DNA of 64,000 bases from Ranitomeya imitator (Eukaryota). Shown here piece by piece: positions 3,001 through 61,849 of the stretch. The notes under the pieces were generated by a model. It worked only from the letters and a program-made list of their open reading frames with translations, did not search any database and had not been told where the DNA came from. Position numbers and translations under genes: made by a program. Location of the stretch: assembly GCF_032444005.1 (NCBI RefSeq), contig NC_091290.1, positions 135,718,001 to 135,782,000 on the forward strand. The letters run 5' to 3'. Every line of letters begins with the position of its first letter. Positions within the stretch are counted from its first letter, which is position 1.

Positions 3001-3245
3001 ATACAGATGGGGGCGTATGGTCAGGAGCACAGTGATTATATACAGAGGGGGGGTGTATGGTCAGGAGCACAGTGATTATATACAGATGGGGGTGTATGGT
3101 CAGGAGCACAGTGATTATATACAGATGGGGGTGTATGGTCAGGAGCACAGTGATTATATACATATGGGGGTGTATGGTCAGGAGCACAGTGATTATATAC
3201 AGAGGGGGGTGTATGGTCAGGGGCACAGTGATTATATACAGAGGG
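1..3245. repeat. ~39-bp minisatellite (GTATGGTCAGGAGCACAGTGATTATATACAGATGGGGGT), ~80 copies, open at the window start
   Basis: Tandem unit read directly; only the G-run length and a few bases vary. It explains all the repetitive ORFs in 1-3250. Confidence 0.97.
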
Positions 3246-3548
3246 GTTAACGATGGTAACCAGGGTAAACATCGGGTTACTAAGCGCGGCCCTGCGCTTA
3301 GTTACCCGATGTTTACCCTGGTTACCAGCGAAGACATCGCTGGATCGGTGTCACACACGCCGATCCAGCGATGTCAGCAGGAGTCCAGCGACGAAATAAA
3401 GTTCTGGACTTTCTTCAGCGACCAACGATCTCCCAGCAGGGGCCTGATCGTTGGTCGCTGTCACACATAATGATTTCATTAACGATATCGTTGCTACGTC
3501 ACAAAAAGCAACGATATCGTTAACAATATCGTTATGTGTGAAGGTACC
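3246..3548. mobile_element. One end of a Harbinger/PIF-type MITE
   Basis: Ends in GTGTGAAGGTACC (reverse complement GGTACCTTCACAC), the same TIR class as the GGC..TTCACAC MITEs elsewhere in the window. Has an internal palindrome (GGTAACCAGGGTAAACATCGGG...CCCGATGTTTACCCTGGTTACC). The other end is not visible. Confidence 0.7.
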
Positions 3549-3549
3549 T

Positions 3550-3998
3550 TTAGACATTGACCACACAGACCATCTTTCCCTCCGGAGGACCCACCACGTC
3601 TAGGCTACCCATGGACAACCTATTGGGTACTAGGTAATACTTTATATCTCCTGTGATGGCGCTGCAAGGAAATTAAGCACATGCTTCCCAGGTCACTAAT
3701 AGATTCCGGGAAAGCAGTGGGACACCCTGTGATCAAGCAATCATTGGTCAATGATCAACCATAACACAAAGGGATTGTCCAAGTCAGGAAGAATATGAGA
3801 ATAATGAATTTCAAAAACTGCAAGAATGCAGAATTCGGGGAAAAATGTCTCAAGTTGTGCCAAAGTTAATGAAATGGAGCACAAGGTATAATACACTGTA
3901 TATGTCTGTACCCTGGACCTTGTGTATCCTAAAACACATGACTGAGATACCAACCTAAATTTGGCACTTACTTTCCGATTGATAGATTCGGCTTTACC
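3550..3998 (-). repeat. Inverted duplicate (449 bp) of 6452-6900 (IST1-A exon 4 3' end plus intron 4)
   Basis: Reverse-complement match followed by eye with only scattered substitutions; includes the last 27 nt of exon 4 and its GTAAGT donor. Confidence 0.93.
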
Positions 3999-4783
3999 CT
4001 TCTTTTCCAGAAGCGCTTTTGGGAGAGGTTTTTTCCTGTAGTATTTTTTTTTACAGCTTTTCGAATTGACAGGGCTTCTTTTGGAGCATATTTAATCGAC
4101 TGACGTGCACTTTTTTGGGGCAATTTTCAAATCTTCTTTGGGAAATAAAATGCTCCAAAAAAAAAAATGAATAGGAAAACTTTTCCTTTTTTAAGGTGTT
4201 TTTTAGTAGTAGATCTACTGGAAATTACTCCTCAAAAAGCTCTGTGTGAACTTGGCATGAAGAACAAAGCCGCCCAACCCAATTTTTTTGGTGTTTTCAT
4301 TGGGGCCCCCTGAGTTACCATGATTGTGAATAAAACATTAAATGCCCAAGTCTATTTTTTTTTGGCTTAACAGAGATAAGCCGACTCCAGATGTTAAAAA
4401 GCACAGTCACCTGCATGTGCTCGGGTATGGGGCTTGGGAGGGATAGCTGTCTGCTGAATACTTTTAGAATAATACATCTTCGATATAGCTGCAGGCTGAC
4501 AGGTGAGACGATTCTTCAAACCAGGGGCACCAGTGTCGCTGTGGCCACTAGATGGCAGTATTTTTTATTATGTTTAAAGGGAACCTGTCAGCTGATTCGT
4601 ACAACCCAAACCACATGCGACCACATATTGTCTCCATTATTGCAGCCATGCATGTTTTTTTCTTAAACACTGCAGCGTTTCAGAGATTTTTCCCAATTTT
4701 TTTAAATTAGCATGCCAATTTTTTGCTATTTTTTAATTACTCTTATACTAAGTAATATTACGAACATGTTGCCTTCTATGTAG

Positions 4784-6394: not shown

Positions 6395-6478
6395 GTCTCT
6401 ATTCAGTTGTGTAACAAGTATGGAAAAAAGTTTGGCAAGCTGTGCCAGAAAGGTAAAGCCGAATCTATCAATCGGAAA
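6395..6478 (+). CDS. IST1: IST1-like paralog A, coding exon 4 (VSIQLCNKYGKKFGKLCQKGKAESINRK)
   Basis: ttgcag/GTAAGT, 84 nt, phase 0-0. Aligns without gaps to IST1 VADQLCAKYSKEYGKLCRTNQIGTVNDR. Confidence 0.9.
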
Positions 6479-6964
6479 GTAAGTGCCAAATTTAGATTGG
6501 TATCTCAGTCATGTGTTTTAGGATACACAAGGTCCAGGGTACAGACATATACAGTGTATTATACCTTGTGCTCCATTTCATTAACTTTCGCACAACTTGA
6601 GACATTTTTCCCCAAATTCTGCATTCTTGCAGTTTTTGAAATTCATTATTCTCATGTTCTTCTTGACTTGGACAATCCCTTTGTGTTATGGTTGATCATT
6701 GACCAATGATTGCTTGATCACAGGGTGTCCCACTGCTTTCCCGGAATCTATTAGTGACCTGGGAAGCATGTGCTTATTTTCCTTGCAGCGCCATCACAGG
6801 AGAGATAAAGTATTACCTAGTACCCAATAGGTTGTCCATGGGTAGCCTAGACGTGGTGGGTCCTCCGGAGGGAAAGATGGTCTGTGTGGTCAATGTCTAA
6901 GAGATAAGTGTCCTCATAGGTTTTAAAAAATGGACAATCCCTTTAACACTTCCTCTGTCCACAG

Positions 6965-13420: not shown

Positions 13421-13849
13421 TTACAGCGAAAAAGGGAGGTAATACAATCCATAGCTATATTATCTATTGGTAAAGTCAGTAACATAGCACAATCTGTGCC
13501 TTCATTAACTCTATTTGATTAATGCAATTTATGCACAGTGGAGTAGTATGGGGAAATACCATCTGGTTTGCAGCAGTGGTATTTAGTGACAAATAAAGGC
13601 TACTGGAAAAATGCACCTTTATAATTATTTGCTTAGATTTTAAGAGTACACAAATTCTTCAGTGAAAAAAATAAAATAAAAATTGGACATCATTAAACCC
13701 TGCTGTCTTCTTCTGAACTCCTGAAGATGGTGTCTGTGTTGGAGCATACAAGGACATAGGCTTACTATAAAATCTTTGGGACATATGGTAGGTATGTAGC
13801 TATTTTTTAACATTTTTTATTTACTAGAAAACCAAAAAGTGTTCCTTAA

Positions 13850-14179
13850 AGGGACTCTGTCACCTGAATTTGGCGGGACTGGTTTTGGGTCATATGGGCG
13901 GAGTTTTCGGGTGTTTGATTCACCCTTTCCTAACCCGCTGGCTGCATGCTGGCTGCAATATTGGATTGAAGTTCATTCTCTGTCCTCCATAGTACACGCC
14001 TGCGCAAGGCAAGATTGCACCTTGTGCAGGCGTGTACTATGGAGGACAGAGAATGAACTTCAATCCAATATTGCAGCCAGCATGCAGCCAGCGGGTAAGG
14101 AAAGGGTGAATCAAACACCCGAAAACTCCGCCCATATGACCCAAAACCAGTCCCGCCAAATTCAGGTGACAGGTTCCCT
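13850..14179. mobile_element. Palindromic Kolobok/T2-type MITE
   Basis: TTAA|AGGGACTCTGTCACC...GGTGACAGGTTCCCT|TTAA; the two halves are near reverse complements. Confidence 0.85.
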
Positions 14180-14239
14180 TTAAAATATCAGTAGTGGGAC
14201 AGAGCACACTGTACAGGTCATAGGTGGTGACAGTATGGT

Positions 14240-37317: not shown

Positions 37318-40300
37318 TTAAATAAGGGAGAGAGCAGACTGGGATATATATGCCGAGGACATCCAGGGATCCCACCACGAGAGGACCCTAACTCTCCTCG
37401 ATAGACCCTGAGCCATAATAACCTCATAGCAGAAGTGTAAGTCGATCCTGGAGATCAGCTCTGCTCTGGAAGGGACATCCGAGGACTTCCAATGCTTCGC
37501 GATACATTGTCTAGCGGCAACTAGGATATTAGAAACTATGGGCCGAAGGGGGGAAGGGAGATCAATGAGGGAGATGCCTAAAACAGCGAGCTGACCACTC
37601 AGCACAAGGGGGAGACGGGTCAGATCAACAATCAAAGCTTCCACTTCGCGCCAGAAGACCTGAATCTGCGGGCACGACCACCAGATATGAGAGGAGGACC
37701 CCAAGGCGCCACATTTCCTCCAGCAGAGAGGGGAGGAAGCTGGGAAAACCTTCGCCAGGTGGACGGGGGTGAGGTACCAGTGGAGCTGAATTTTTTTCAC
37801 CTGTTCCAAGTGGCCAAGACAAGACGAAAACCTGGAAGGGTGTACCATAGCAAATTGCCAATCCTCCAGGGGGGCCTCAAAACCCAGCGCGGACTCCCAG
37901 GAAGACATGAAAGGAAGCTTGTCAGAAGATCCAAATGAAATGAGGGCTTTATAGATTATGGAGATGCCATGTGGCACCATAGTGGCCGGTCTGAAGAATC
38001 TATGGGCCGGATCCTCTGTCAAAGGCGGGGGCGTCCCGAATGGCCGACATGACCTGAGAAAGCTGCGGATCTGCAGGTATTGAAAGAAGTCAGACTTAGT
38101 AAGGGAGAATCTCCCTGAGAGGTCCTCAAACGACAAAATGCCGTCCGAGCCGAAAAGGTCCGCCACCCGGAGCACCCCACGCCTCGTCCAGGAGGAAAGA
38201 GAAATGTGGCCGATGGCACACTCCAGAGCCTGCAAAGAAACATAGTCAAACATAAATATTAGATGGGAAGTGCTAAGCAGCGCCCATAGTTTAGAAGCGT
38301 TCCTAATAGAACGGAGACAGGGACCCACAAGAGGAACTTGAAGCAGTTGAAGCTCCAAGAGCAATCTAAGCGAGTTTTTAGGGGCAAAATGAGATTCAAT
38401 CAGAAACCAGGGCAAACATGAGTTCCCCTCCCACCATATTTTAAGGGGCTCAAGGATCGCCGCCCTATAGTAAGACTACACCGCAGGAGCTCCCAACCCC
38501 CCCACAGAGTACGGTAGGGACATGATCCGACGCTTGACCCTATGGGGCTTCTTATTCCAAATAAACCGGTCTATAAGAGATTGAAAAGCTGAAATAAACT
38601 TCGAGGGGATGAAAAGGGGGAGGCACCGAAAAAGGTACATTATTTTGGGAAGGAATAGCATTTTCGCCGTTTGTATGCGGGCCATCCATGAGAGGGACGC
38701 ACTTGATAATTGCTCCATGCCCTTCCTAACCTCCGAAAGAGTTTCTTCACAATTCATACGGACTATGTTATCTAGCTTAGTTATCCTGATGCCTAGGTAC
38801 GTAAAGCCCAAGGGAGCCCAAATAAACGCATATTGAGATTGAATTTGAATCTGAAGGGGGGCGGGGAGGAAAAGGGGAAAAATTGTGGATTTGGTCAGAT
38901 TAAGCTTATAATATGAAACCGCCGAAAACTCAGATAGGATGGAAGTGATCGCGTTCAGTGAGGTTAAGGGTGAGGTGCAGGTCAGGACCACGTCGTCGGC
39001 ATAGAGACCGATTTTATGTTCAGATCCCCCCACCGCGATTCCCTTTATGTCCGCGCTCTGCCTGACCATGGCAGCCAAAGGCTCCATGACCAGAGCAAAG
39101 ATGATAGGGGAGAGGGGGCAGCCCTGACGAGTACCATTCCGAATAGGAAAAGTCCGAGACCCGAATCCCGCCGATCGAACCGACGCGCATGGATTGGAAT
39201 ATAATATCTAAAGAGCAGAAAGGCGGGCACCGCACAAAAGAATATATACTTGAGAGGATCAGCCACGTGCATATGTAAGATCAATAGAACAAAAAAAAAG
39301 AAAAAGACTATGCACACAGTGGGATCAACTGCATATAATAAATTTTATTTTACAAAACACCTCACTCCGCACAAAGGCACAGTAGGGAAAAACACACATT
39401 AAAAACAATTAAAACAAAGACAACCTATCCACATCCCCCTCAAAAATAATCCCAAGGATCCACATAGTCATATATAAATCATATAACAGACATTCAAAAA
39501 GTTTAGGCAGAATAACATCAACATAGATGATTATTTAATTCCTAATACTGCCCACTAAATAAGTCTGAATAAAGAGAATATCTCAGTTAAATCCTGCATG
39601 CAACCCGTATGACCTAGTCACATCACTGGCCCGTGATAAGTGTATAATATTGTCCAAAAGGACGTCAGACACTGAACCAGAAAAACTCACTGACATGACC
39701 CATAGATACCATGCCCCTAATCTGGCACCTCATCCAATACATTACCAAGTCTGGCAAAGCCTGTTACGGAAGAATAAATCCCTCATGAATATCCAGGGGG
39801 GAAAAGGAATAAATGTGCCTTAAAGGAAAATATGGGCACAACAGACTGGCACTGACCGGTACTATCCAATAAAGCTGGGTGATCCAGAAAACAGAGCTGG
39901 AATGAGAGGAGTCCAAAGCATATATATATATGGGAGGAGGGGGGGAGCGGATAGGAACCCAACGCGTGTCGACGCTGCTAAGGCGTCTTCGTCAGGGGAA
40001 GATAATGCCATAACCGCTTTGCCAATCTGCCCGGTGAGCCCAAATCTCTCCAATGTGAGTTCAATATAACCCCAGTGCACCCTGTCGAACGCCTTTTCGG
40101 CATCAAGCGACAGAAATACACTGGGGAGGCTCCCCCTCTCCACCACATCCAAGAGATCTATCAGACGCCTGGTGCCATCCCTGGTCTGTCTGCCAGGAAC
40201 AAACCCAACTTGGTCGGGGTGGATGAGACTAGGAAGGACCGAGAATAATCTATTGGCCCAGACTTTTGCATAAATCTTAACGTCGCAGTTTAAAAGTGCT

Positions 40301-41892
40301 ATCGGGCGGAAGTTCCCCGGAGATGTTGTGGGTTTCCCTTGTTTGGGGAGAGTCGCAATGGAAGCTTCCAACCCCTCCGCCCTAATACTGCCAACCGACA
40401 ACCAATTATTAAAAAGGCGCAAAAGATAGGGCGAGAGGACAGAGAAGAACTGAGCATAGTAAAGGAAAGAGAAGCCATCAGGCCCTGGGGAGGAACTCTT
40501 ATTGGCCTCTCTAACAATCTGCGAGAGTTCAGACTCGACAATGGGAGCGTTTAGGAAAGAGAGCTGCTCCTGGGTGACCGAGGGGAGATTAGCCCTCTCC
40601 AAGAACGCCAAAATTGACTCCCGCGAAGGCTGGGGATTTCCTGGGTCAGACCCGAGGTCATAGAGAGAGGAATAATAAGATGCAAACTCCTCAGCAATCT
40701 GAATCGGGTTGCGAACCTGGGAGCCGTCAGGCCTGAGCAAAAATGGGATCTTGGATTGAGCCTCTCTCTTCCTAACACGTCTGGCCAGAACAGCACCCGC
40801 TCGATCCCCCATTGTGTAAAATTTGGCTCTAGTTTTCCTCAGGGCCTTCTCAGCTTTGTGGAGGAGTAGATTACGAACATGCATTCGGGCCTTAGAAAGG
40901 TCAGAGAGAAGCGCTGGGGTAGGAGATAGTTTATGAGCAGCCTCCAGACGAGATAATTCGTCTAGGGCTGAATGGAGGGCCGCATTGTACTTCCTCTTAG
41001 CCTTTGCCGCCAGCTTAATGAAATGACCCCTAATTACCGCCTTGTGGGCGAACCAGAGGGTGTCATCACCTATGTCAGGAGTATCATTGGAGGCAAAAAA
41101 TTCCCCCAATGCCTCCTCTATACATTGGGAGTTGGATTGGTCAGCAAGGAGATGGGCATTGAGACGCCAGTACGCAGGAGGTCTGATGGCCAAGGGGTCT
41201 TTCAGGGTAAGGGACACCGGGGCATGGTCCGACCAGGTGATACTGCCTATATCCGATGAGATGCAGTGAGGAAGAGCCACGTCATTCACCAGCACAAAAT
41301 CAATCCTGCTATAGGAACCGTGTCTGGGAGACAAAAATGTGTAATCTCTCTCACCGCAATGCAGATATCGCCAGACATCATGCAAGTGGAAAGAGTTAGT
41401 TAGAGGCCCGACCTCGCATCTGGTCAGGGAAGAGGCAGAGCAGTCAAGAACTCTAGACATTGGGGCATTGAAATCACCAGCAATCAGTTTGTGACCGTGT
41501 TGGATATCATGTAGAGTTTTGAAAACGCCCTCCAGAAACTTAAGCTGCCCTACGTTAGGAGCGTAGATCGAGGCAATAGTATAGGGGGCATTATTAATAA
41601 GGCATAGAACCACAATGAATCTACCCAGCGGGTCCGCTATAGAGCGAACCAGCTGAAAGGAGTTGGACCTGCTGAAAAAAATGGCTACTCCCGCCTTTTT
41701 TGACGGGCCATTGGCGAAAAACTGATGCGGGAATAAACCTGATTGCATTCTGGGATTATCACATTCCAGCAAGTGAGTTTCTTGAAGACATAAAATATCA
41801 TGGCGGGATTTGCCCAACTGACGCCAGACCACAGACCTCTTGCCCGGTGAGTTGAGGCCATAAACGTTAATTGAATACAGTGAGATACTCAT
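37318..41892 (-). pseudogene. L1 ORF2 (APE endonuclease, RT, C-terminal cysteine motif), disrupted
   Basis: EN motifs LQETH and SDHAP; RT motifs LDAEKAFD, RQGCPLSP, YADD; CWRKC...HIWWSC. Removing the 796-bp insert and one TSD copy leaves one frame of 1258 codons with a single internal TAG (38478-38476). Confidence 0.92.
39206..40001 (-). mobile_element. 796-bp Penelope-pLTR-like insertion starting with a mutated minimal hammerhead
   Basis: 5-bp TSD ATAAT (39201-39205, 40002-40006). Minus strand begins CTTCCC-CTGACGA-AGACGC-CTTAGCA-GCGTC-GACAC-GC-GTT-GGG. Confidence 0.75.
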
Positions 41893-42240
41893 TGAAAAGG
41901 CATAAAAACAGTTTTACAATCCTCAGACACCGATAGCCTGTGCAAAGGCATAGAAAACATGTGGCCAATAGACTAGGACATAAGTAAGGGCAGACTGGGA
42001 ACAGGGAGGAGAGAAATAGGGAAACAAACAAGACATACGACAAATAAACCAGTGGACCGAGGTCCATTCAGGGATACCCTGAGTCCAGAAGGTGAGAATC
42101 AGAAAAACAGTTCACCTATGGGGCAAACAAATGCTGCGGGAACTCTCAAAAGAGAAACCAACGCAGCTTAAAAAAGCGAAAAAGGAAAAACCAAGTGTAT
42201 CCGTGCGGGAAAATAGCCAGGAACCATAGTTGCAGTGGGC

Positions 42241-43317
42241 TCAGGCCACCTCCCAGTCCGGTGTGATGCGAGCCCTGAGACCTCCGCCAGCTCCAGGCTT
42301 AGAAAGGTTCACGGAGATCGAGGGGTCTGGAGTCGGGAGACCCCATTTGGAGAGAGCAGAAGCTGCGTGGGACGGAGTTAGGCAGGTGGTGATTGATCCG
42401 TCTTTGCGGATGAGCAGCTTGGTAGGGAACCCCCAACGGTACAGGATGCCCTTCTCTCTGAGGATGGTAGTATAGGGGGCAAAGGCCCTCCGCAGGGCCA
42501 ATGTACCCGGGGAGAGATCCGGAAAGACTGAGATGCTTGCAAATCTTTCAGGAAGAGCTGGGTTCCTCCTTAGGGCCTGTAGAAAGTCCTCCCTCATTTC
42601 GAAAAAGTGTATGCGTGCCAGCACATCTCTGGGGATGGAGGGCCCCAGGCCAGAGGGTTTAGGGATCCTATGCACGCGGTCAATTATGAAGTCCTTTGGC
42701 GCGAACTGCGGTAGGGCTGCCGCCATAAAGTCCTGCAGAAATAGCTTCAAATCCCCTACCAGGACAGACTCCTCAATGCCTCTAAGTTTGACGATATTTC
42801 TCCTGGACCTATCTTCCAGGTCCAGGGCTTTAGAGTGAGTTTTAGCGGCCAGGGTTTGCAGGGTCTCATGGGCGTCCCAGAGTTCGTTATGAGAAGAGAC
42901 TAGCTCCGCCATCTTGCGTTCCAAACGGTCCGTGCGATTACCCAGCTCCGCCACCTCTCCTCTCAGCTCAGCCAGCATAGTGCGCATATCCTCTTGGATG
43001 GAGGTTCTGAGGTCTCCAAGTAGACCTTTGAGGAGAGAAGCGGTCACCGGACCATCGGCCGAATCAGACGCCGTACCGCCTGAATTCAACGCTGCTCTGC
43101 CTGAATGCGACGCCGCTCCGCCTGGATGCGACGCCGCTCCGTCTGGATGCGACGCCGCAGCGCCCGACTGCGACGCCTGAGCGTTGCGTTGTGAAGAGCG
43201 GGAAGGCCTGGGGGAGGACGGCGCCATCTTGGATACCGGCGGTGGCTGCGGGGTGGCCGCAAAGAAGTCAGGAATTCTCCTGGAGGGGTCACGGGTGCCA
43301 GCTCTGGATTTCCCCAT
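42241..43317 (-). CDS. L1 ORF1p (358 aa, intact)
   Basis: Coiled-coil region followed by LEDRSRRNIVKLRGIEE (RRM start) and YRWGFP, typical of L1 ORF1. Confidence 0.9.
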   Translation of the reverse strand: MGKSRAGTRDPSRRIPDFFAATPQPPPVSKMAPSSPRPSRSSQRNAQASQSGAAASHPDGAASHPGGAASHSGRAALNSGGTASDSADGPVTASLLKGLLGDLRTSIQEDMRTMLAELRGEVAELGNRTDRLERKMAELVSSHNELWDAHETLQTLAAKTHSKALDLEDRSRRNIVKLRGIEESVLVGDLKLFLQDFMAAALPQFAPKDFIIDRVHRIPKPSGLGPSIPRDVLARIHFFEMREDFLQALRRNPALPERFASISVFPDLSPGTLALRRAFAPYTTILREKGILYRWGFPTKLLIRKDGSITTCLTPSHAASALSKWGLPTPDPSISVNLSKPGAGGGLRARITPDWEVA

Positions 43318-44019
43318 ACACTCACCGATGCACCGGGAGCCAGTACCGATGTCGTGGAGGCAAACGAGGACACCGGAGAGGTAGAAATGTGCCGCTTTAA
43401 GGTTCCTGGCTGAGGAGCTCCCGCTCTGTGCGACCTACTCCATCGGCAGACAGGCCACGCCCCCGTATAGGACATATTTTTCACAAATAACACATGGCAC
43501 TGAGAGCACGCACATAAAGGTGTATTGTTCTGTTTCTCCAAAGTTCAAGCGTTCCTCTGCTTAGGTCGAAATTTGCTGCTTGGCCAAATGGTGGGTGCAA
43601 AACAACAAGAGCACCCTGCCTGCCAAGGTAGGACTGAAATCTGTGCAGAACAACAACTCACTAGAAAGATATATAAAGGGGCAGAGTCCTACACCATCTG
43701 TGAGTACAGTAATGGATCACTAGTACCCCAAATTTTGTCAATTTTGCTAGCTCATATTGTATTGATCTGGAACAGCTTGTGAAGTACATTTTTTCACAAA
43801 AAAAAGAATTATGCCCATTTCATCAAACAGTACAAAAAATGTAAATAAACTGCTGTAAAAAAATAAAAAAAAATGGACATCACTAAGCTCTGCTGCCTCC
43901 TCCCGAACTCCAGAAGATGGTGTCTACGTCGGACCAATACAAGGACATAGGCTTACTATAAAATCTTTGGGACATAATGTAGGTATGTAACTACAGTATT
44001 GCTATATAGCTCTGACCAT

Positions 44020-47595: not shown

Positions 47596-47793
47596 CCAGA
47601 ACTGGAAATTACCTCAGGAAGTGTGAGTCCTGAGCTGGAAATTACCTCAGGAAGTGTGAGTCCTGAGCTGGAAATTACCTCAGGAAGTGTGAGTCCTGAG
47701 CTGGAAATTACCTCAGGAAGTGTGAGTCCTGAGCTGGAAATTACCTCAGGAAGTGTGAGCCCTGAGTTGGAAGTTACCTCAGGAAATGTGTGA
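47596..47793. repeat. 33-bp tandem repeat x6 (CCTGAGCTGGAAATTACCTCAGGAAGTGTGAGT)
   Basis: Read directly; each unit has an internal CCTGAG/CTCAGG palindrome; no spacers. Confidence 0.9.
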
Positions 47794-48174
47794 GCCCTAA
47801 GATGGGAGGCTCCTCCCGGCCATTTCCATGGCAGCTTGTTGTTAGGAGAATAATCACTTAGATTTCATATACACATTGGCCAGTAGATGACAGCAACGCA
47901 CATTTATGAGTCATCGGTATACAATGCAAATGTATTACATCCCTAGGACCCAGGAAACCCAGGAAAGAAATAATCTTGGTACCGTGTTAGCCAGTAGATA
48001 GAAAAATATTTTTTTATGTTTTTTTTATGGTTAAATTCATGTATTTTATAATCACTTATTTGCTATATATATAATTATACATTTGATATGTGTATATTTT
48101 ATCATTATTTTTAGTGGATGCTTTCCTGAAACGGAAAGTACTTGCAAGCAGCATAATACAAAGAATAGCAGGTT

Positions 48175-48212
48175 TACCCAGAATCCTTTGCAGTAGGCGG
48201 AGCTATGCAAAT
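48175..48212. promoter_or_regulatory. snRNA-type distal element in each monomer: SPH/Staf(ZNF143)-like motif, GC box, octamer
   Basis: TACCCAGAATCCTTTGCA (48175-48192, one mismatch to the recalled consensus YWCCCRNMATSCMYYRCR), GGCGGAGC (48196-48203), perfect ATGCAAAT (48205-48212); repeated every 384 bp. Confidence 0.65.
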
Positions 48213-48293
48213 CATCTCTTTCCACCCCTGTCTAATCCACAGCGCTTGGAACCGCCAAGCGTGCAATGCTGCGGATTAGTTTCTAAATTTACA

Positions 48294-48372
48294 CAGCCAA
48301 CCAATTCCTACCTGTGGACACGTGTTTCGGGCTTTAGGCCCTCATCAGCACAGGGCTGGAATTGGTTGGCTG
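48294..48372 (-). ncRNA. Type I hammerhead ribozyme, copy 1
   Basis: Stem I CCUGUG/CACAGG, CUGAUGA, stem II GGGC-CUAAA-GCCC, GAAAC-ACGU-GUC. Stem I is extended by 15 bp (CAGCCAACCAAUUCC/GGAAUUGGUUGGCUG) beyond an AGC/UA internal loop. Confidence 0.93.
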
Positions 48373-48677
48373 TATGGAGTGGGGCTCGGTGAGCAAGCGA
48401 TACATACATGCTAGCCACCTTAGGGAGAGACCCAAGTTGGGCTAAATGTAGCGGGACGAAAGAGACCGAAAAGCCCTCTACTTAAAGGAAATACATAGTG
48501 GATGCTTTCCTGAAACGGAAAGTACTTGCAAGCAGCATAATACAAAGAATAGCAGGTTTACCCAGAATCCTTTGCAGTAGGCGGAGCTATGCAAATCATC
48601 TCTTTCCACCCCTGTCTAATCCACAGCGCTTGGAACCGCCAAGCGTGCAATGCTGCGGATTAGTTTCTAAATTTACA

Positions 48678-48756
48678 CAGCCAACCAATTCCTACCTGTG
48701 GACACGTGTTTCGGGCTTTAGGCCCTCATCAGCACAGGGCTGGAATTGGTTGGCTG
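48678..48756 (-). ncRNA. Type I hammerhead ribozyme, copy 2
   Basis: Identical to copy 1, offset +384. Confidence 0.93.
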
Positions 48757-49061
48757 TATGGAGTGGGGCTCGGTGAGCAAGCGATACATACATGCTAGCC
48801 ACCTTAGGGAGAGACCCAAGTTGGGCTAAATGTAGCGGGACGAAAGAGACCGAAAAGCCCTCTACTTAAAGGAAATACATAGTGGATGCTTTCCTGAAAC
48901 GGAAAGTACTTGCAAGCAGCATAATACAAAGAATAGCATGTTTACCCAGAATCCTTTGCAGTAGGCGGAGCTATGCAAATCATCTCTTTCCACCCCTGTC
49001 TAATCCACAGCGCTTGGAACCGCCAAGCGTGCAATGCTGCGGATTAGTTTCTAAATTTACA

Positions 49062-49140
49062 CAGCCAACCAATTCCTACCTGTGGACACGTGTTTCGGGC
49101 TTTAGGCCCTCATCAGCACAGGGCTGGAATTGGTTGGCTG
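49062..49140 (-). ncRNA. Type I hammerhead ribozyme, copy 3
   Basis: Identical to copy 1, offset +768. Confidence 0.93.
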
Positions 49141-49688
49141 TATGGAGTGGGGCTCGGTGAGCAAGCGATACATACATGCTAGCCACCTTAGGGAGAGACC
49201 CAAGTTGGGCTAAATGTAGCGGGACGAAAGAGACCGAAAAGCCCTCTACTTAAAGGAAATACATAGTGGATGCTTTCCTGAAACGGAAAGTACTTGCAAG
49301 CAGCATAATACAAAGAATAGCAGGTTTACCCAGAATCCTTTGCAGTAGGCGGAGCTATGCAAATCATCTCTTTCCACCCCTGTCTAATCCACAGCGCTTG
49401 GAACCGCCAAGCGTGCAATGCTGCGGATTAGTTTCTAAATTTACACAGCCAACCAATTGAGATGATTTGCATAGCTCCGCCTACTGCAAAGGATTCTGGG
49501 TAAACCTGCTATTCTTTGTATTATGCTGCTTGCAAGTACTTTCCGTTTCAGGAAAGCATCCACTATGTATTTCCTTTAAGTAGAGGGCTTTTCGGTCTCT
49601 TTCGTCCCGCTACATTTAGCCCAACTTGGGTCTCTCCCTAAGGTGGCTAGCATGTATGTATCGCTTGCTCACCGAGCCCCACTCCATA

Positions 49689-49767
49689 CAGCCAACCAAT
49701 TCCAGCCCTGTGCTGATGAGGGCCTAAAGCCCGAAACACGTGTCCACAGGTAGGAATTGGTTGGCTG
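49689..49767 (+). ncRNA. Type I hammerhead ribozyme, copy 4 (inverted arm); predicted cleavage after 49744
   Basis: CCTGTG 49707-49712, CTGATGA 49713-49719, GGGCCTAAAGCCC, GAAAC 49733-49737, ACGT, GTC 49742-49744, CACAGG 49745-49750. Confidence 0.93.
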
Positions 49768-50440
49768 TGTAAATTTAGAAACTAATCCGCAGCATTGCAC
49801 GCTTGGCGGTTCCAAGCGCTGTGGATTAGACAGGGGTGGAAAGAGATGATTTGCATAGCTCCGCCTACTGCAAAGGATTCTGGGTAAACCTGCTATTCTT
49901 TGTATTATGCTGCTTGCAAGTACTTTCCGTTTCAGGAAAGCATCCACTATGTATTTCCTTTAAGTAGAGGGCTTTTCGGTCTCTTTCGTCCCGCTACATT
50001 TAGCCCAACTTGGGTCTCTCCCTAAGGTGGCTAGCATGTATGTATCATTATTTTTATACACTTCTATTTTACAGATTAATTGTTATTTTTTGCACTTTAT
50101 AATAATTTTTTCCACATACATTCCTTGTAACAAACGCCCCATTTAGCATACAAATGCATTTTCATTGAGCATAATTTTATGTAACTTTTAATAAATTTTT
50201 TCTGTCATTTTTATCTGAGATATTAATAAAGTAAATTTTAATTCTGGACTGTTAATTGTTTTTTTCGTTCGTGGTGTTTTGGTTGCTAATTGCCGAGTGT
50301 CCATTTGGTTCACAGTAGCACTCATTTATATTTAGGATATTTTACACTTATTGACAAAAAACTTTAATAATATTTCTCTTTTTTTTGTGCTTCTGTGTGT
50401 TGTCCCTCCTTCTCTTTGTTTGGTATTTTTATGGTATGCA

Positions 50441-53400
50441 GGCTGGCACTGTTATGGATCACTGTGGCTGACAGTTATGGGACACTGGCACTTTTATGGA
50501 TCACTGTGACTGGTACTGTTATGGATCACTGTGGCTGGTACTGTTATGGATCACTGTGGCTGGTACTGCTATGGATCACTGTGACTGGTACTGTTATGGA
50601 TCACTGTGGCTGGTACTGTTATGGATCACTGTGGCTGGTACTGTTATGGATCACTGTGGCTGGTACTGTTATGGATCACTGTGGCTGGTACTGTTATGGA
50701 TCACTGTGGCTGGTACTGTTATGGATCACTGTGGCTGGTACTGTTATGGATCACTGTGACTGGTACTGTTATGGATCACTGTGGCTGGTACTGTTATGGA
50801 TCACTGTGGCTGGTACTGTTATGGATCACTGTGGCTGGTACTGTTATGGATCACTGTGACTGGTACTGTTATGGATCACTGTGGCTGGTACTGTTATGGA
50901 TCTCTGTGGCTGGTACTGTTATGGATCTCTGTGGCTGGTACTGTTATGGATCACTGTGGCTGGTACTGTTATGGATCACTGTGACTGGTACTGTTATGGA
51001 TCACTGTGGCTGGTACTGTTATGGATCACTGTGGCTGGTACTGTTATGGATCACTGTGGCTGGTACTGTTTTGGATCACTGTGGCTGGTACTGTTATGGA
51101 TCACTGTGGCTGGTACTGTTATGGATCACTGTGGCTGGTATTGTTATGGATCACTGTGGCTGGTACTGTTATGGATCACTGTGGCTGGTACTGTTATGGA
51201 TCACTGTGGCTGGTACTGTTATGGATCACTGTGGCTGGTACTGTTATGGATCACTGTGACTGGTACTGTTATGGATCACTGTGGCTGGTACTGTTATGGA
51301 TCACTGTGGCTGGTACTGTTATGGATCACTGTGGCTGGTACTGTTATGGATCACTGTGGCTGGTACTGTTATGGATCACTGTGGCTGGTACTGTTATGGA
51401 TCACTGTGGCTGGTACTGTTATGGATCACTGTGACTGGTACTGTTATGGATCACTGTGGCTGGTACTGTTATGGATCTCTGTGGCTGGTACTGTTATGGA
51501 TCTCTGTGGCTGGTACTGTTATGGATCACTGTGGCTGGTACTGTTATGGATCACTGTGACTGGTACTGTTATGGATCACTGTGGCTGGTACTGTTATGGA
51601 TCACTGTGGCTGGTACTGTTATGGATCACTGTGGCTGGTACTGTTTTGGATCACTGTGGCTGGTACTGTTATGGATCACTGTGGCTGGTACTGTTATGGA
51701 TCACTGTGGCTGGTATTGTTATGGATCACTGTGGCTGGTACTGTTATGGATCACTGTGGCTGGTACTGTTATGGATCACTGTGGCTGGTACTGTTATGGA
51801 TCACTGTGGCTGGTACTGTTATGGATCACTGTGACTGGTACTGTTATGGATCACTGTGGCTGGTACTGTTATGGATCACTGTGGCTGGTACTGTTATGGA
51901 TCACTGTGGCTGGTACTGTTATGGATCACTGTGGCTGGTACTGTTATGGATCACTGTGGCTGGTACTGTTATGGATCACTGTGGCTGGTACTGTTATGGA
52001 TCACTGTGGCTGGTACTGTTATGGATCACTGTGGCTGGTACTGTTATGGATCACTGTGGCTGGTACTGTTATGGATCACTGTGGCTGGTACTGTTATGGA
52101 TCACTGTGACTGGTACTGTTATGGATCACTGTGGCTGGTACTGTTATGGATCACTGTGGCTGGTACTGTTATGGATCACTGTGACTGGTACTGTTATGGA
52201 TCACTGTGGCTGGTACTGTTATGGATCACTGTGGCTGGTACTGTTATGGATCACTGTGGCTGGTACTGTTATGGATCACTGTGACTGGTACTGTTATGGA
52301 TCACTGTGGCTGGTACTGTTATGGATCACTGTGGCTGGTACTGTTATGGATCTCTGTGGCTGGTACTGTTATGGATCACTGTGGCTGGTACTGTTATGGA
52401 TCACTGTGGCTGGTACTGTTATGGATCACTGTGGCTGGTACTGTTATGGATCACTGTGACTGGTACTGTTATGGATCACTGTGGCTGGTACTGTTATGGA
52501 TCTCTGTGGCTGGTACTGTTATGGATCACTGTGGCTGGTACTGTTATGGATCACTGTGGCTGGTACTGTTATGGATCTCTGTGGCTGGTACTGTTATGGA
52601 TCTCTGTGGCTTGTACTGTTATGGATCACTGTGGCTGGTACTGTTATGGATCACTGTGACTGGTACTGTTATGGATCACTGTGGCTGGTACTGTTATGGA
52701 TCACTGTGGCTGGTACTGTTATGGATCACTGTGGCTGGTACTGTTTTGGATCACTGTGGCTGGTACTGTTATGGATCACTGTGGCTGGTACTGTTATGGA
52801 TCACTGTGGCTGGTACTGTTTTGGATCACTGTGGCTGGTACTGTTATGGATCACTGTGACTGGTACTGTTATGGATCACTGTGGCTGGTACTGTTATGGA
52901 TCACTGTGGCTGGTACTGTTTTGGATCACTGTGGCTGGTACTGTTTTGGATCACTGTGGCTGGTACTGTTATGGATCACTGTGGCTGGTACTGTTATGGA
53001 TCACTGTGGCTGGTACTGTTTTGGATCACTGTGGCTGGTACTGTTTTGGATCACTGTGGCTGGTACTGTTATGGATCACTGTGGCTGGTACTGTTATGGA
53101 TCACTGTGACTGGTACTGTTATGGATCACTGTGGCTGGTATTGTTATGGATCACTGTGGCTGGTACTGTTATGGATCACTGTGGCTGGTACTGTTATGGA
53201 TCACTGTGGCTGGTACTGTTATGGATCACTGTGGCTGGTACTGTTATGGATCACTGTGGCTGGTACTGTTATGGATCACTGTGGCTGGTACTGTTATGGA
53301 TCACTGTGACTGGTACTGTTATGGATCACTGTGGCTGGTACTGTTATGGATCTCTGTGGCTGGTACTGTTATGGATCTCTGTGGCTGGTACTGTTATGGA

Positions 53401-56175
53401 TCACTGTGGCTGGTACTGTTATGGATCACTGTGACTGGTACTGTTATGGATCACTGTGGCTGGTACTGTTATGGATCACTGTGGCTGGTACTGTTATGGA
53501 TCACTGTGGCTGGTACTGTTTTGGATCACTGTGGCTGGTACTGTTATGGATCACTGTGGCTGGTACTGTTATGGATCACTGTGGCTGGTATTGTTATGGA
53601 TCACTGTGGCTGGTACTGTTATGGATCACTGTGGCTGGTACTGTTATGGATCACTGTGGCTGGTACTGTTATGGATCACTGTGGCTGGTACTGTTATGGA
53701 TCACTGTGGCTGGTACTGTTATGGATCACTGTGGCTGGTACTGTTATGGATCACTGTGGCTGGTACTGTTATGGATCACTGTGGCTGGTACTGTTATGGA
53801 TCACTGTGGCTGGTACTGTTATGGATCACTGTGGCTGGTACTGTTATGGATCACTGTGGCTGGTACTGTTATGGATCACTGTGGCTGGTACTGTTATGGA
53901 TCACTGTGGCTGGTACTGTTATGGATCACTGTGGCTGGTACTGTTATGGATCACTGTGACTGGTACTGTTATGGATCACTGTGGCTGGTACTGTTATGGA
54001 TCACTGTGGCTGGTACTGTTATGGATCACTGTGACTGGTACTGTTATGGATCACTGTGGCTGGTACTGTTATGGATCACTGTGGCTGGTACTGTTATGGA
54101 TCACTGTGGCTGGTACTGTTATGGATCACTGTGACTGGTACTGTTATGGATCACTGTGGCTGGTACTGTTATGGATCACTGTGGCTGGTACTGTTATGGA
54201 TCTCTGTGGCTGGTACTGTTATGGATCACTGTGGCTGGTACTGTTATGGATCACTGTGGCTGGTACTGTTATGGATCACTGTGACTGGTACTGTTATGGA
54301 TCACTGTGGCTGGTACTGTTATGGATCTCTGTGGCTGGTACTGTTATGGATCACTGTGGCTGGTACTGTTATGGATCACTGTGGCTGGTACTGTTATGGA
54401 TCTCTGTGGCTGGTACTGTTATGGATCTCTGTGGCTTGTACTGTTATGGATCACTGTGGCTGGTACTGTTATGGATCACTGTGACTGGTACTGTTATGGA
54501 TCACTGTGGCTGGTACTGTTATGGATCACTGTGGCTGGTACTGTTATGGATCACTGTGGCTGGTACTGTTTTGGATCACTGTGGCTGGTACTGTTATGGA
54601 TCACTGTGGCTGGTACTGTTATGGATCACTGTGGCTGGTACTGTTTTGGATCACTGTGGCTGGTACTGTTATGGATCACTGTGACTGGTACTGTTATGGA
54701 TCACTGTGGCTGGTACTGTTATGGATCACTGTGGCTGGTACTGTTTTGGATCACTGTGGCTGGTACTGTTTTGGATCACTGTGGCTGGTACTGTTATGGA
54801 TCACTGTGGCTGGTACTGTTATGGATCACTGTGGCTGGTACTCTTTTGGATCACTGTGGCTGGTACTGTTTTGGATCACTGTGGCTGGTACTGTTATGGA
54901 TCACTGTGGCTGGTACTGTTATGGATCACCGTGACTGGTACTGTTATGGATCACCGTGGCTGGTATTGTTATGGATCACTGTGGCTGGTACTGTTATGGG
55001 ACACTGTGGCTGGTATTGTTATGGATCACTGTGGCTGGTACTGTTATGGATCTCTGTGGCTGGTACTGTTATGGATCACTGTGGCTGGTACTGTTATGGA
55101 TCTCTGTGGCTGGTACTGTTATGGATCACTGTGGCTGGTACTGTTATGGATCACTGTGGCTGGTACTGTTATGGATCTCTGTGGCTGGTACTGTTATGGA
55201 TCTCTGTGGCTTGTACTGTTATGGATCACTGTGGCTGGTACTGTTATGGATCACTGTGACTGGTACTGTTATGGATCACTGTGGCTGGTACTGTTATGGA
55301 TCACTGTGGCTGGTACTGTTATGGATCACTGTGGCTGGTACTGTTTTGGATCACTGTGGCTGGTACTGTTATGGATCACTGTGGCTGGTACTGTTATGGA
55401 TCACTGTGGCTGGTACTGTTTTGGATCACTGTGGCTGGTACTGTTATGGATCACTGTGACTGGTACTGTTATGGATCACTGTGGCTGGTACTGTTATGGA
55501 TCACTGTGGCTGGTACTGTTTTGGATCACTGTGGCTGGTACTGTTTTGGATCACTGTGGCTGGTACTGTTATGGATCACTGTGGCTGGTACTGTTATGGA
55601 TCACTGTGGCTGGTACTCTTTTGGATCACTGTGGCTGGTACTGTTTTGGATCACTGTGGCTGGTACTGTTATGGATCACTGTGGCTGGTACTGTTATGGA
55701 TCACCGTGACTGGTACTGTTATGGATCACTGTGGCTGGTATTGTTATGGATCACTGTGGCTGGTACTGTTATGGGACACTGTGGCTGGTATTGTTATGGA
55801 TCACTGTGACTGGTACTGTTATGGATCACTGTGGCTGGTATTGTTATGGATCACTGTGGCTGGTATTGTTATGGGACACTGCTTGATACTGTTATGAGAC
55901 ACTATGACTGACACTCTTATTTTCATGGTACTCAGGCTGGCAATGTTATGGATCACGGCCGCTGGCAGAGTTATGGGGCATTGCTTGGCACTGTAATGGA
56001 TCACTGTGATTGGCACTTTTATGAATCACTGTGATTGGCACTGTTATGTGATACTGGGTGACACTATTATGGGGCATTGCTTGGCACTGTTATGCATTAC
56101 TGTGGCTGGCACTGTTATGGAGCACTGGCAGTGTTATAGATCAGTATAGTTGGCACTGTTATAGGTAAGTGTGGC
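50441..56175. repeat. 25-bp minisatellite (GGTACTGTTATGGATCACTGTGGCT), ~217 homogeneous copies to about 55875, then degenerate
   Basis: Read directly. Variant units recur at offsets of 575, 775 and 1825 bp. Confidence 0.97.
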
Positions 56176-59668: not shown

Positions 59669-59807
59669 GTGAGTCTGGGTCTATTAGTGATGTACTATGG
59701 CCATGGTGGTATCAAATTTCTACACCATCAGCTGATTTAATTCATCCAACATTCCTGGTCCGAGTATAGACCATGATATCTGGGCTGACTGCTTCTCTCC
59801 TCACCTA

Positions 59808-61548
59808 CAGGTCCTTCTCCAAAAATTAGCATATAGTGTTAAATTTCATTATTTACCATAATGTAATGATTACAATTAAACTTTCATATATTATAGATTC
59901 ATTATCCACCAACTGAAATTTGTCAGGTCTTTTATTGTTTTAATACTGATGATTTTGGCATACAACTCCTGATAACCCAAAAAACCTGTCTCAATAAATT
60001 AGCATATTTCACCCATCCAATCAAATAAAAGTGTTTTTTAATAACAAACAAAAAAAACAACAAATAATAATGTTCAGTCATGCACTCAATACTTGGTCGG
60101 GAATCCTTTGGCAGAAATGACTGCTTCAATGCGGCGTGGCATGGAGGCAATCAGCCTGTGACACTGCTGAGATGTTATGGAGGCCCAGGATGCTTCAATA
60201 GCGGCCTTAAGCTCATCCAGAGTGTTGGGTCTTGCGTCTCTCAACTTTCTCTTCACAATATCCCACAGATTCTCTATGGGGTTCAGGTCAGGAGAGTTGG
60301 CAGGCCAATTGAGCACAGTAATACCATGGTCAGTAAACCATTTACCAGTGGTTTTGGCACTGTGAGCAGGTGCCAGGTCGTGCTGAAAAATGAAATCTTC
60401 ATCTCCATAAAGCATTTCAGCCGATGGAAGCATGAAGTGCTCCAAAATCTCCTGACCAACACCAGTAGCTGACATGGCACCCCACACCATCACTGACTGT
60501 GGGTACTTGACACTGGACTTCAGGCATTTTGGCATTTCCTTCTCCCTAGTCTTCCTCCAGACTCTGGCACCTTGATTTCCGAATGACATGCAAAATTTGC
60601 TTTCATCAGAAAAAAGTACTTGGGACCACTTAGCCACAGTCCAGTGCTGCTTCTCTGTAGCCCAGGTTAGGCGCCTCTGCCGCTGTTTATGGTTCAAAAG
60701 TGGCTTTACCTGGGGAATGCGGCACCTGTAGCCCATTTCCTGCACACGCCTGTGCACGGTGGCTCTGGATGTTTCCACACCAGACTCAGTCCACTGCTTC
60801 CTCAGGTTCCCCAAGGTCTGGAATCGGTCCTTCTCCACAATCTTCCTCAGGGTCCGGTCTCCTCTTCTCGTTGTACAGCGTTTTCTGCCACATTGTTTCC
60901 TTCCAACAGACTTACCATTGAGGTGCCTTGATACAGCACTCTGGGAACAGCCTATTTGTTGAGAAATTTCTTTCTGGGTCTTACCCTCTTGCTTGAGGGT
61001 GTCAATGATGGCCTTCTTGACATCTGTCAGGTCGCTAGTCTTACCCATGATGGGGGTTTTGAGTAATGAACCAGGCAGGGAGTTTATAAAAGCCTCAGGT
61101 ATCTTTTGCATGTGTTTAGAGTTAATTAGTTGATTCAGAAGATTAGGGTAATAGGTCGTTTAGAGCAGAGGTCCCCAACTCCAGTCCTCAAGGCCCACCA
61201 ACAGGTCATGTTTTCAGGATTTCCTTTGCATTGCACAGGTGATGCAATTATTACCTGGGCAAGACTAAGGAAATCCTGAAAACATGACATGTTGGTGGGC
61301 CTTGAGAACTGGAGTTGGGGACCTCTGGTTTAGAGAACCTTTTCTTGATATGCTAATTTATTGAGACCGTTTTTTTGGGTTATCAGGAGTTGTATGCCAA
61401 AATCATCAGTATTAAAACAATAAAAGACCTGACAAATTTCAGTTTGGTGGATAATGAATCTATAATATATGAAAGTTTAATTGTAATCATTACATTATGG
61501 TAAATAATGAAATTTAACACTATATGCTAATTTTTTGAGAAGGACCTG
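59808..61548 (-). mobile_element. Tc1 (DD34E) transposon with ~200-bp ITRs; transposase ORF 60086-61048 with an in-frame internal deletion
   Basis: TA|CAGGTCCTTCTC...GAGAAGGACCTG|TA; motifs FSDES, FQHD and SPDLNPIE with 34-residue D-E spacing. Confidence 0.93.
61166..61327. mobile_element. hAT MITE (162 bp) nested in the Tc1
   Basis: CAGAGGTCCCCAACTCCAGT TIR; perfect 8-bp TSD GTTTAGAG (61158-61165, 61328-61335). Confidence 0.9.
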
Positions 61549-61849
61549 TATATTCAAAAACCTCATAGGCATATATAAGGCTGTAAATTCGGGTCGAGAA
61601 ATCAGCGATCAGTCCGGACATCATTTTATTTCATAAATCAATAATACTCGTGAAAATAAGAAACTTTGTATTATATCGGAGAAATCCGCTTCTTTCTCCT
61701 CTTGGATTCATCTTTTTTTTTTTTCAAAATACTCAGTTCATGGATAAAATCGGTCTTCAGTTAATATTGACTGAAATAGGAGGTGATAGTTGGTGCTTAT
61801 AAAGTTCTATGGAGAGCTGTAACTGTGGTTTCAGGAGATCGTGTAGCGG

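What the first reader, a model, noticed from the sequence alone, without database searches (positions are those of the whole stretch)
48101..50056. Multimer plus inversion inside one 13-bp TSD: footprint of twin-primed reverse transcription on a circular or multimeric RNA
Seen: ATCATTATTTTTA flanks the whole structure. The left arm (3.5 units, ribozyme on minus) and right arm (588 bp, ribozyme on plus) meet at 49458/49459. Both outer ends share microhomology with the TSD (TA left, ATC right), there is no poly(A), and neither arm ends at the ribozyme cut site. Established: inversion plus TSD is the twin-priming signature of target-primed retrotransposition, and Penelope-like elements often leave inverted partial-tandem ends. 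Inference: both target strands primed on a circular template and went round more than once, giving direct evidence for how retrozyme arrays form.
Basis: partly seen in the sequence, partly recalled or inferred. Interest (0 to 1): 0.75.

Follow-up and report, generated by a model that had tools for sequence, protein, structure and literature searches.

The report
Frog retrozyme insertion with inverted arm
A very young 1.9-kb insertion in a frog genome consists of five identical copies of a non-coding repeat that carries a self-cutting RNA motif, with one part flipped, inside a single duplicated target site. This layout suggests both cut DNA ends started copying the repeat's RNA, but the kind of element and this way of inserting are already described.

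Summary
A 384-bp unit with a complete type I hammerhead motif forms 3.51 units on the minus strand (48112-49458). These meet 1.53 units on the plus strand (49459-50046) head-to-head. The whole is bounded by a perfect direct repeat that is 14 nt, not 13 (48100-48113 and 50043-50056).

The RNA-sense 3' ends face the duplicated target and the 5' ends meet in the centre. The outer ends share 2 nt and 4 nt with the target, and the inner joint shares none. There is no poly(A). Only 1 of 1935 bases departs from the unit.

This geometry fits target-primed reverse transcription from both 3' ends of a staggered break. It is also the known insertion architecture of Penelope-like elements, whose protein cuts and extends both strands in vitro (PMC11167929).

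The circular-template part of the reading is not shown; a linear multimeric RNA or two RNA molecules fit equally well.

Earlier notes of this scan report similar fold-back copies of the same 384-bp unit elsewhere in this genome.

Verdict: real, an informative example of a known kind, moderate interest.

The parts
48100..48113 (.). Left copy of the 14-nt target-site duplication. Its last 2 nt (TA) are also the end of the repeat unit, which gives the microhomology.
   Evidence: (family D11)
48112..49458 (-). Left arm: 3.51 units of the 384-bp retrozyme unit, 1347 bp, with ribozyme sense on the minus strand. The sense 5' end is at 49458 (register 11) and the sense 3' end at 48112 (register 205).
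48294..48366 (-). Type I hammerhead motif, copy 1. The predicted cut lies between 48317 and 48316.
48678..48750 (-). Type I hammerhead motif, copy 2. The predicted cut lies between 48701 and 48700.
48939..48939 (.). The only base that departs from the unit in the whole insertion (T instead of G on the plus strand, register 146). It is not mirrored in the right arm at 49890 or 49506.
49062..49134 (-). Type I hammerhead motif, copy 3. The predicted cut lies between 49085 and 49084.
49458..49459 (.). Head-to-head inversion joint. Register 11 of the left arm meets register 99 of the right arm, with no shared bases and no filler. The left side lies inside helix I of a hammerhead, 10 nt from the cut site.
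49459..50046 (+). Right arm: 1.53 units, 588 bp, with ribozyme sense on the plus strand. The sense 5' end is at 49459 (register 99) and the sense 3' end at 50046 (register 302).
49695..49767 (+). Type I hammerhead motif, copy 4. The predicted cut lies between 49744 and 49745. The fold has a long helix I, with z = -6.8 against shuffles.
50043..50056 (.). Right copy of the 14-nt target-site duplication. Its first 4 nt (TATC) are also the end of the right arm, which gives the microhomology.

Best explanation
This is one very recent retrotransposition event of an amphibian non-LTR retrozyme, a 384-nt non-coding RNA with a type I hammerhead. The proposed steps are as follows.

1. An AT-rich site was cut on both strands 14 bp apart (12 to 14 if the shared bases came from the RNA), leaving 3' overhangs.
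2. The bottom-strand 3' end (ending GATA) annealed to the only UAUC in the unit, at register 299-302, and was extended for 588 nt.
3. The top-strand 3' end (ending TA) annealed at register 204-205 in an AU-rich stretch that is mostly predicted unpaired, and was extended for 1347 nt.
4. Both cDNAs copied sense RNA through uncleaved or religated hammerhead sites, so the template was a multimer or a circle.
5. The two cDNA 3' ends were then joined without homology, by a template jump or by end joining.

The enzyme is most likely the reverse transcriptase and GIY-YIG endonuclease of a Penelope-like element acting in trans.

**Shown:** the anatomy, the registers, the microhomologies and the youth of the insertion.
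**Inferred:** RNA as the template, priming from two ends, and the identity of the enzyme.
For: - **One event.** The perfect 14-nt duplication encloses both arms.
- **Orientation.** The sense 3' ends are outward and the 5' ends central. This is what priming from both 3' overhangs on sense RNA predicts.
- **Microhomology.** There are 4 nt on the right, at the single UAUC of the unit (1 of 384 positions), and 2 nt on the left (24 of 384).
- **Youth and shared source.** The arms are identical to each other and to the unit apart from one base in 1935.
- **Not a simple fold-back.** The arms are offset by 88 nt and end at different registers.
- **Literature.** Penelope-like insertions are partial tandems with a head-to-head inverted 5'-truncated copy inside 8-10-bp duplications (PMC3846280, PMC8557442). 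The PAc protein cuts and extends both strands at AT-rich DNA and uses unprocessed multimeric RNA (PMC11167929). Retrozymes are proposed to depend on Penelope-like elements (PMC7229834 and preprint 10.64898/2026.07.22.740005).
Against: - No reads, empty allele or second copy could be examined.
- The inner joint has no microhomology, unlike what I recall as usual for L1 twin-priming joints.
- The two outer ends lie at different registers (205 and 302), each with microhomology to the target. In vitro, the PAc protein starts at fixed internal RNA sites that have no homology to the target.
- No Penelope-like reverse transcriptase is in the window. The only one present belongs to a LINE with an AP-type endonuclease.
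- A single primer followed by a template switch gives the same final sequence.
Confidence: 0.58

Rival explanations
1. Single-primed reverse transcription followed by a template switch (snap-back). In this reading only the top strand primed, at register 205. After 1347 nt the cDNA 3' end folded back with an 88-nt loop and copied 588 nt of itself. Its new 3' end (TATC) then annealed to the bottom-strand overhang, which primed second-strand synthesis.
For: - The right arm is complementary to 48783-49370, leaving an 88-nt spacer, which is the form of a hairpin with a loop.
- The 4-nt microhomology on the right is what microhomology-mediated 5'-junction formation would give.
- Self-priming has been proposed for the head-to-head repeats of Penelope elements (PMC3846280).
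Against: - The bases at the fold-back point do not pair (T opposite T at 49457-49458 against 49371-49372), so there is no primer-template contact.
- The variant at 48939 is not mirrored at 49890, although it may have arisen after insertion.
- The model needs a step not shown for these enzymes, whereas extension of both strands has been shown in vitro.
- PMC3846280 notes that self-priming gives the head-to-head form only on an antisense template.
Confidence: 0.18
2. Two separate DNA-level events or captures. Either a second retrozyme insertion landed exactly at the boundary of a first one, or two cDNA or extrachromosomal fragments were ligated into one staggered double-strand break by end joining.
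For: - Microhomology of 2-4 nt and a blunt inner joint are also typical of end joining.
- Penelope-like proteins are reported to nick their own copies as well as other AT-rich DNA.
Against: - The right arm has no duplication of its own beyond a 3-nt ATT.
- A second event would have had to hit the exact boundary between the element and the duplication.
- Both arms are equally young, with 0 mismatches in 588.
- Both have their 3' ends outward, a 1-in-4 outcome for random capture.
- A simple inversion inside a direct array is excluded by the registers: 302 would have to adjoin 11.
Confidence: 0.1
3. Assembly artefact: a chimeric or fold-back read, or a mis-join within a repeat, created the inversion.
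For: - Read support could not be examined.
- Tandem and inverted Penelope-type structures are known to trouble assemblies (PMC8557442).
Against: - A missed-adapter fold-back gives a perfect palindrome that returns into the same flank. Here the arms are offset by 88 nt and the right arm ends at another register.
- The sequence continues into a different, unique flank that starts with an exact second copy of the 14-nt target.
- There are no gaps in the window.
- The whole structure is under 2 kb.
Confidence: 0.06

Closest known systems
Metazoan non-LTR retrozymes, including amphibian satellite-2-type hammerhead repeats (Cervera and de la Pena 2020, PMC7229834)
   Same: - A tandem non-coding unit of 170-400 bp with a type I hammerhead in every unit.
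- GC below 50%.
- A target duplication longer than 4 bp.
- Helix III is weak and capped by a palindromic ACGU tetraloop, as in amphibian motifs that cleave as dimers.
- The monomer RNA is compact and self-paired, with z = -6.5.
   Different: - The papers I could search describe arrays in direct orientation only. The word 'inverted' has no hit in PMC7229834, and its single hit in the 2026 preprint is a cited title about another kind of transposon.
- Here one insertion holds a direct multimer plus an inverted partial multimer.
- Expression and circularity of this frog RNA were not tested.
Insertion architecture of Penelope-like elements (Arkhipova et al. 2013, PMC3846280; Craig et al. 2021, PMC8557442; Frangieh et al. 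2024, PMC11167929)
   Same: - A partial tandem with an adjacent head-to-head inverted 5'-truncated copy.
- A short duplication of variable length.
- An AT-rich target.
- A hammerhead in the repeated part.
- Copying through uncleaved ribozyme sites.
- Both strands used as primers, as shown in vitro.
   Different: - There is no ORF; the element is non-autonomous.
- No 30-40-bp tail could be recognised.
- The outer ends lie at two different registers with target microhomology, whereas PAc starts at fixed sites without homology.
L1 twin priming (Ostertag and Kazazian 2001; cited from my own knowledge)
   Same: - An inversion with the 5' ends in the centre.
- One duplication around the whole.
- The second primer is the top-strand 3' overhang annealing internally on the RNA.
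   Different: - There is no poly(A), so both primers annealed internally.
- There is no microhomology at the inversion joint.
- The template is repetitive, so the usual small deletion or duplication at the joint cannot be read uniquely: it would be a 107-nt overlap or a 277-nt gap on a linear multimer.
- The target is not a clear TTTT/AA site.

Membership tests
Metazoan non-LTR retrozyme | A type I hammerhead with an intact catalytic core in each repeat unit | tested here: met
   Four motifs align over the full HH9 model, with CUGAUGA, GAAAC and GUC present (30.1 bits, E 5.5e-5, below the Rfam gathering score of 52). Helix I is open and helices II and III are capped.
Metazoan non-LTR retrozyme | A short tandem non-coding unit (about 170-400 bp) without LTR, PBS or PPT | tested here: met
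   The period is 384. Only spurious ORFs of 100 aa or fewer occur, repeating with the unit. Only the unit itself repeats, so there are no terminal repeats apart from it. PBS and PPT were not formally searched.
Metazoan non-LTR retrozyme | Target duplication longer than 4 bp, and GC below 50% | tested here: met
   The duplication is 14 nt. GC is 0.459 for 48001-50000.
Metazoan non-LTR retrozyme | Expressed as self-cleaved linear and circular RNA | not testable with these tools
Penelope-like element type insertion | A partial tandem plus an adjacent inverted 5'-truncated copy, head-to-head, inside one target duplication | tested here: met
   The definition comes from PMC8557442 and PMC3846280.
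Penelope-like element type insertion | A 30-40-bp tail extension at one end | tested here: inconclusive
   Both ends continue the unit up to the duplication with no extra bases. The tail is defined relative to a family's usual end, which I could not establish from one copy.
Penelope-like element type insertion | Encodes a reverse transcriptase with a GIY-YIG endonuclease | tested here: not met
   There is no ORF in the insertion. The only reverse transcriptase in the window sits with an AP-type endonuclease (LINE, 39862-41892 minus). The insertion would therefore be a non-autonomous passenger, not a Penelope-like element itself.
L1-type twin priming | 5' ends central, 3' ends outward, one duplication around both segments | tested here: met
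L1-type twin priming | A poly(A) tail at the 3' end and a T-rich primer | tested here: not met
   Neither outer end has an A run.
L1-type twin priming | Microhomology at the inversion joint | tested here: not met
   There are zero shared bases at 49458/49459.

The most novel reading that the evidence does not exclude
The insertion may be a fossil of rolling-circle reverse transcription on a single 384-nt circular retrozyme RNA, primed at the same time from both strands of one target by a dimeric Penelope-like enzyme. The near-perfect identity of all five unit passes would then reflect repeated copying of one circle. The locus would be in vivo evidence that a ribozyme-made circular RNA is a template for retrotransposition and that arrays are born as arrays.
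Probability: 0.25. Interest if true: 0.65.

Novelty: new member of a known kind. Interest (0 to 1): 0.4.

Why it matters
How animal retrozymes move is still a model. The published proposal is a target-primed or RNA-primed copy of a circular RNA made by an unidentified enzyme, with Penelope-like elements as the favoured candidate (PMC7229834).

A fresh, undecayed insertion with a clean target duplication, microhomology at both outer ends and a Penelope-style inverted arm supports three points:
- The DNA target is the primer.
- Multimers are inserted in one step.
- The structure carries the mark of the enzyme family that cuts and extends both strands in vitro (PMC11167929).

It does not settle whether the template is a circle. 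Its main value is as one data point in a genome-wide census of this family in the poison frog, where earlier notes of this scan report several similar copies.

Tried and rejected

- Exact scans of metagenome and viral contigs for the 25-nt ribozyme core found nothing. This was expected for frog DNA and says nothing.
- Exact look-up of five spurious ORFs found none in the collection. Two of them span the inversion joint and two span the left junction. Even the generic unit ORF is absent, so this is uninformative.
- Rfam at gathering thresholds finds nothing in the window. The hammerhead appears only with E-value reporting.

**Ideas rejected**
- A simple inversion within a direct array: the registers do not fit.
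- A perfect fold-back chimera: there is an 88-nt offset and the flanks differ.
- Mobilisation by the LINE in the window: the unit shares no sequence with it and has no poly(A).

**Weak evidence, not used as support**
- RNA folding places both 3' ends in or next to stretches predicted unpaired, and both 5' ends in stable helices. With two points each this is not significant.
Here both outer ends lie beside UGUAU, but at different positions relative to it, so I draw no conclusion.

Full report
**1. What is there**

The stretch 48112-49458 is a tandem array of a 384-bp unit, with 3.5 copies at 99% matches. It is followed at once by 588 bp (49459-50046) that are the reverse complement of the array.

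A blastn of one unit against the window finds only these pieces. They cover registers 1-384 twice, then 11-384, 1-205, 99-384 and 1-302, and all are 100% identical except for one unit with one mismatch. That variant is T at 48939.

The composite is bounded by a perfect direct repeat of 14 nt, TATCATTATTTTTA, at 48100-48113 and 50043-50056 (family D11).
- The 14-mer occurs nowhere else in the window even with one mismatch, against 0.07 expected.
- At an offset of 1943 bases it is the only run of 10 or more matches outside the 39-bp minisatellite at the start of the window.
- At the composition of the flanks, 14 matches in a row have a chance of about 1e-7.
- The flanks are unique in the window, and the window holds no N.

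**2. The unit**

Each unit holds a hammerhead motif: three on the minus strand and one on the plus strand.

Rfam does not report it at gathering thresholds. With E-value reporting, all four align over the full Hammerhead_HH9 model at 30.1 bits and E 5.5e-5, against a gathering score of 52. They have CUGAUGA, GAAAC and the GUC triplet, with helix I open, so the motif is type I.

Helix III is two pairs capped by the palindromic loop ACGU. This is the amphibian form that is reported to cleave poorly alone and well as a dimer (PMC7229834).

The local hairpin folds at -45.5 kcal/mol with z -6.8. The whole monomer folds at -149.7 kcal/mol with z -6.5, and its two ends are brought together.

There is no real ORF. 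The longest are 92-100 aa, they repeat with the unit and lie antisense to the ribozyme.

GC is 0.46.

By these features the unit is an amphibian non-LTR retrozyme of the satellite-2 type. The scan's earlier notes say the genome is a poison frog's and that the same 384-bp unit is abundant there. I treat those notes as leads only.

**3. Registers and geometry**

I number the unit in RNA sense from the first base after the predicted cut. The cuts lie at 49744|49745 on the plus strand, and at 48317|48316, 48701|48700 and 49085|49084 on the minus strand.

| Arm | Sense 5' end | Sense 3' end | Length |
|---|---|---|---|
| Left (minus) | register 11, at 49458 | register 205, at 48112 | 1347 nt |
| Right (plus) | register 99, at 49459 | register 302, at 50046 | 588 nt |

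Both sense 3' ends therefore touch the duplicated target and both 5' ends meet in the centre.

Read as target-primed reverse transcription, the primer of the right arm is the bottom strand of the right flank with the 14-mer. The primer of the left arm is the top strand of the left flank with the 14-mer. That corresponds to two nicks 14 bp apart leaving 3' overhangs, each of which was extended on sense RNA. This is the geometry of twin priming.

The last two bases of the left copy of the 14-mer (TA) and the first four of the right copy (TATC) are also the ends of the arms.
- UAUC occurs once in the 384-nt unit, exactly at the right arm's end (1 of 384 positions).
- UA occurs 24 times.

The right end therefore looks annealing-guided, while the left end is weak evidence.

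The inner joint has no shared base and no filler.

Both arms run through hammerhead cut sites, three times and once. The template was therefore uncleaved or religated at those sites.

**4. What it is not**

- **A missed-adapter or fold-back chimera.** This would be a perfect palindrome returning into the same flank. Here there is an 88-nt offset (pair I2), the outer registers differ, and the right flank is different and unique, opening with the second copy of the target.
- **A simple inversion inside a direct array.** This would need register 302 to have adjoined register 11, which it does not.
- **A second, nested insertion.** This would have had to land exactly on the boundary between element and duplication, with no duplication of its own beyond ATT. 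Yet both arms are equally undiverged.
- **Mobilisation by the LINE in the window.** The ORF at 39862-41892 minus has an AP-type endonuclease and a reverse transcriptase. It shares nothing with the unit, and there is no poly(A).

**5. Mechanism**

The best reading is one retrotransposition event with priming from both target strands.

The literature makes the enzyme assignment plausible:
- Penelope-like elements insert as partial tandems, often with an inverted 5'-truncated copy head-to-head, inside 8-10-bp duplications (PMC3846280; PMC8557442).
- The purified PAc protein of the green anole cuts and extends both strands of AT-rich DNA, unlike R2 and L1. It uses unprocessed multimeric RNA, and ribozyme cleavage is not needed (PMC11167929).
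- Retrozymes are proposed to be non-autonomous passengers of these elements (PMC7229834; preprint 10.64898/2026.07.22.740005).

Two differences remain.
- PAc starts at fixed internal RNA sites without homology to the target. Here the two starts are 97 nt apart and each carries microhomology.
- No tail extension can be recognised from a single copy.

*Circle or multimer?* Nothing here decides this. On a linear multimer whose 5' end is a ribozyme cut, the left arm would cover positions 11 to 1357. The right arm would cover either 1251-1838, a 107-nt overlap, or 1635-2222, a 277-nt gap. From my own knowledge of L1, both are ordinary for twin priming.

The left arm's inner end lies 10 nt from a cut site, inside helix I. 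This hints at a linear, cut template with a little trimming, but the chance of it is about 3-5% per end, and only one of the two ends shows it. If that holds up in a census, it would favour linear templates.

A circle needs displacement of the enzyme's own cDNA on each round, which has not been shown for these enzymes. Multimeric RNAs are seen in axolotl.

The identity of all unit passes fits a single circle. It fits equally a transcript of a young, homogeneous array.

*Main rival.* This is a single primer followed by a snap-back with an 88-nt loop. It gives the same sequence, but three points count against it:
- The bases at the fold-back point do not pair (T opposite T).
- The variant at 48939 is not mirrored at 49890.
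- Arkhipova and colleagues note that self-priming gives head-to-head repeats only on an antisense template.

**6. What could not be done**

Read support, an empty allele and RNA evidence are therefore all untested.
- Pattern scans of other collections and an exact look-up of junction-spanning ORFs were blank and are uninformative.
- Other copies of the family could only be seen through the scan's notes. These report fold-back copies of the same unit (s1-294651, s1-294659), a 353-bp family with tandem and inverted units (s1-294645), and a polymorphic direct array (s1-288102).
- The scan has thus already met this architecture on other DNA of this genome.

**7. Novelty and score**

The element is of a known kind, and so is the Penelope-type architecture.

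In the library I could search, no paper links twin priming with Penelope-like elements or retrozymes. The three papers that hold both 'twin priming' and 'Penelope' have titles and abstracts on other subjects, and I did not open them. The two retrozyme papers I searched do not describe inverted arms.

The locus therefore adds a clean example that ties retrozyme insertion to target priming and to Penelope-style use of both strands. It is a single, unverified locus and does not show a circular template.

I rate it a new member of a known kind, with interest 0.4.

Noticed in passing
window 48175-48214, repeated every 384 bp and mirrored in the right arm: Each unit carries an octamer (ATGCAAAT). 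Just upstream of it is a stretch (TTACCCAGAATCC...) that resembles a Staf/SPH site of snRNA-type enhancers. From my own knowledge, newt satellite 2 is transcribed from an snRNA-type promoter.
   Followed up: partly
window 50485-56127: A very long, homogeneous minisatellite (25-bp unit, about 226 copies, 95% matches) starts 430 bp to the right of the insertion. A 33-bp minisatellite (5.7 copies) lies at 47602-47790 on the left. The retrozyme therefore landed in a short AT-rich island between two arrays.
   Followed up: no
window 37318-43541, minus strand: Large ORFs of a LINE. The ORF at 39862-41892 has an AP-type endonuclease plus the start of a reverse transcriptase, and 38476-39087 has the rest of that domain. 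The ORFs are split, so the copy is probably broken.
   Followed up: partly
window 59806-61550: A Tc1/mariner-type DNA transposon. A 341-aa transposase ORF at 60086-61111 (minus) has HTH_Tnp_Tc3_2 and DDE_3 hits, and sits between roughly 200-bp terminal inverted repeats that are 98-99% complementary.
   Followed up: partly
window 13846-14183: A near-perfect hairpin with 164-nt arms (98% complementary) and a 10-nt loop. It overlaps a below-threshold match to a plant microRNA family (MIR5284, 61.5 bits against a gathering score of 93). It is most likely a fold-back or MITE-type element, not a microRNA.
   Followed up: no
window 3550-4003 and 6447-6900: A pair of 454-nt inverted repeats, 98% complementary and 2.4 kb apart, next to an 83-copy 39-bp minisatellite (1-3246). 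It could be a transposon with long terminal inverted repeats or another fold-back insertion.
   Followed up: no
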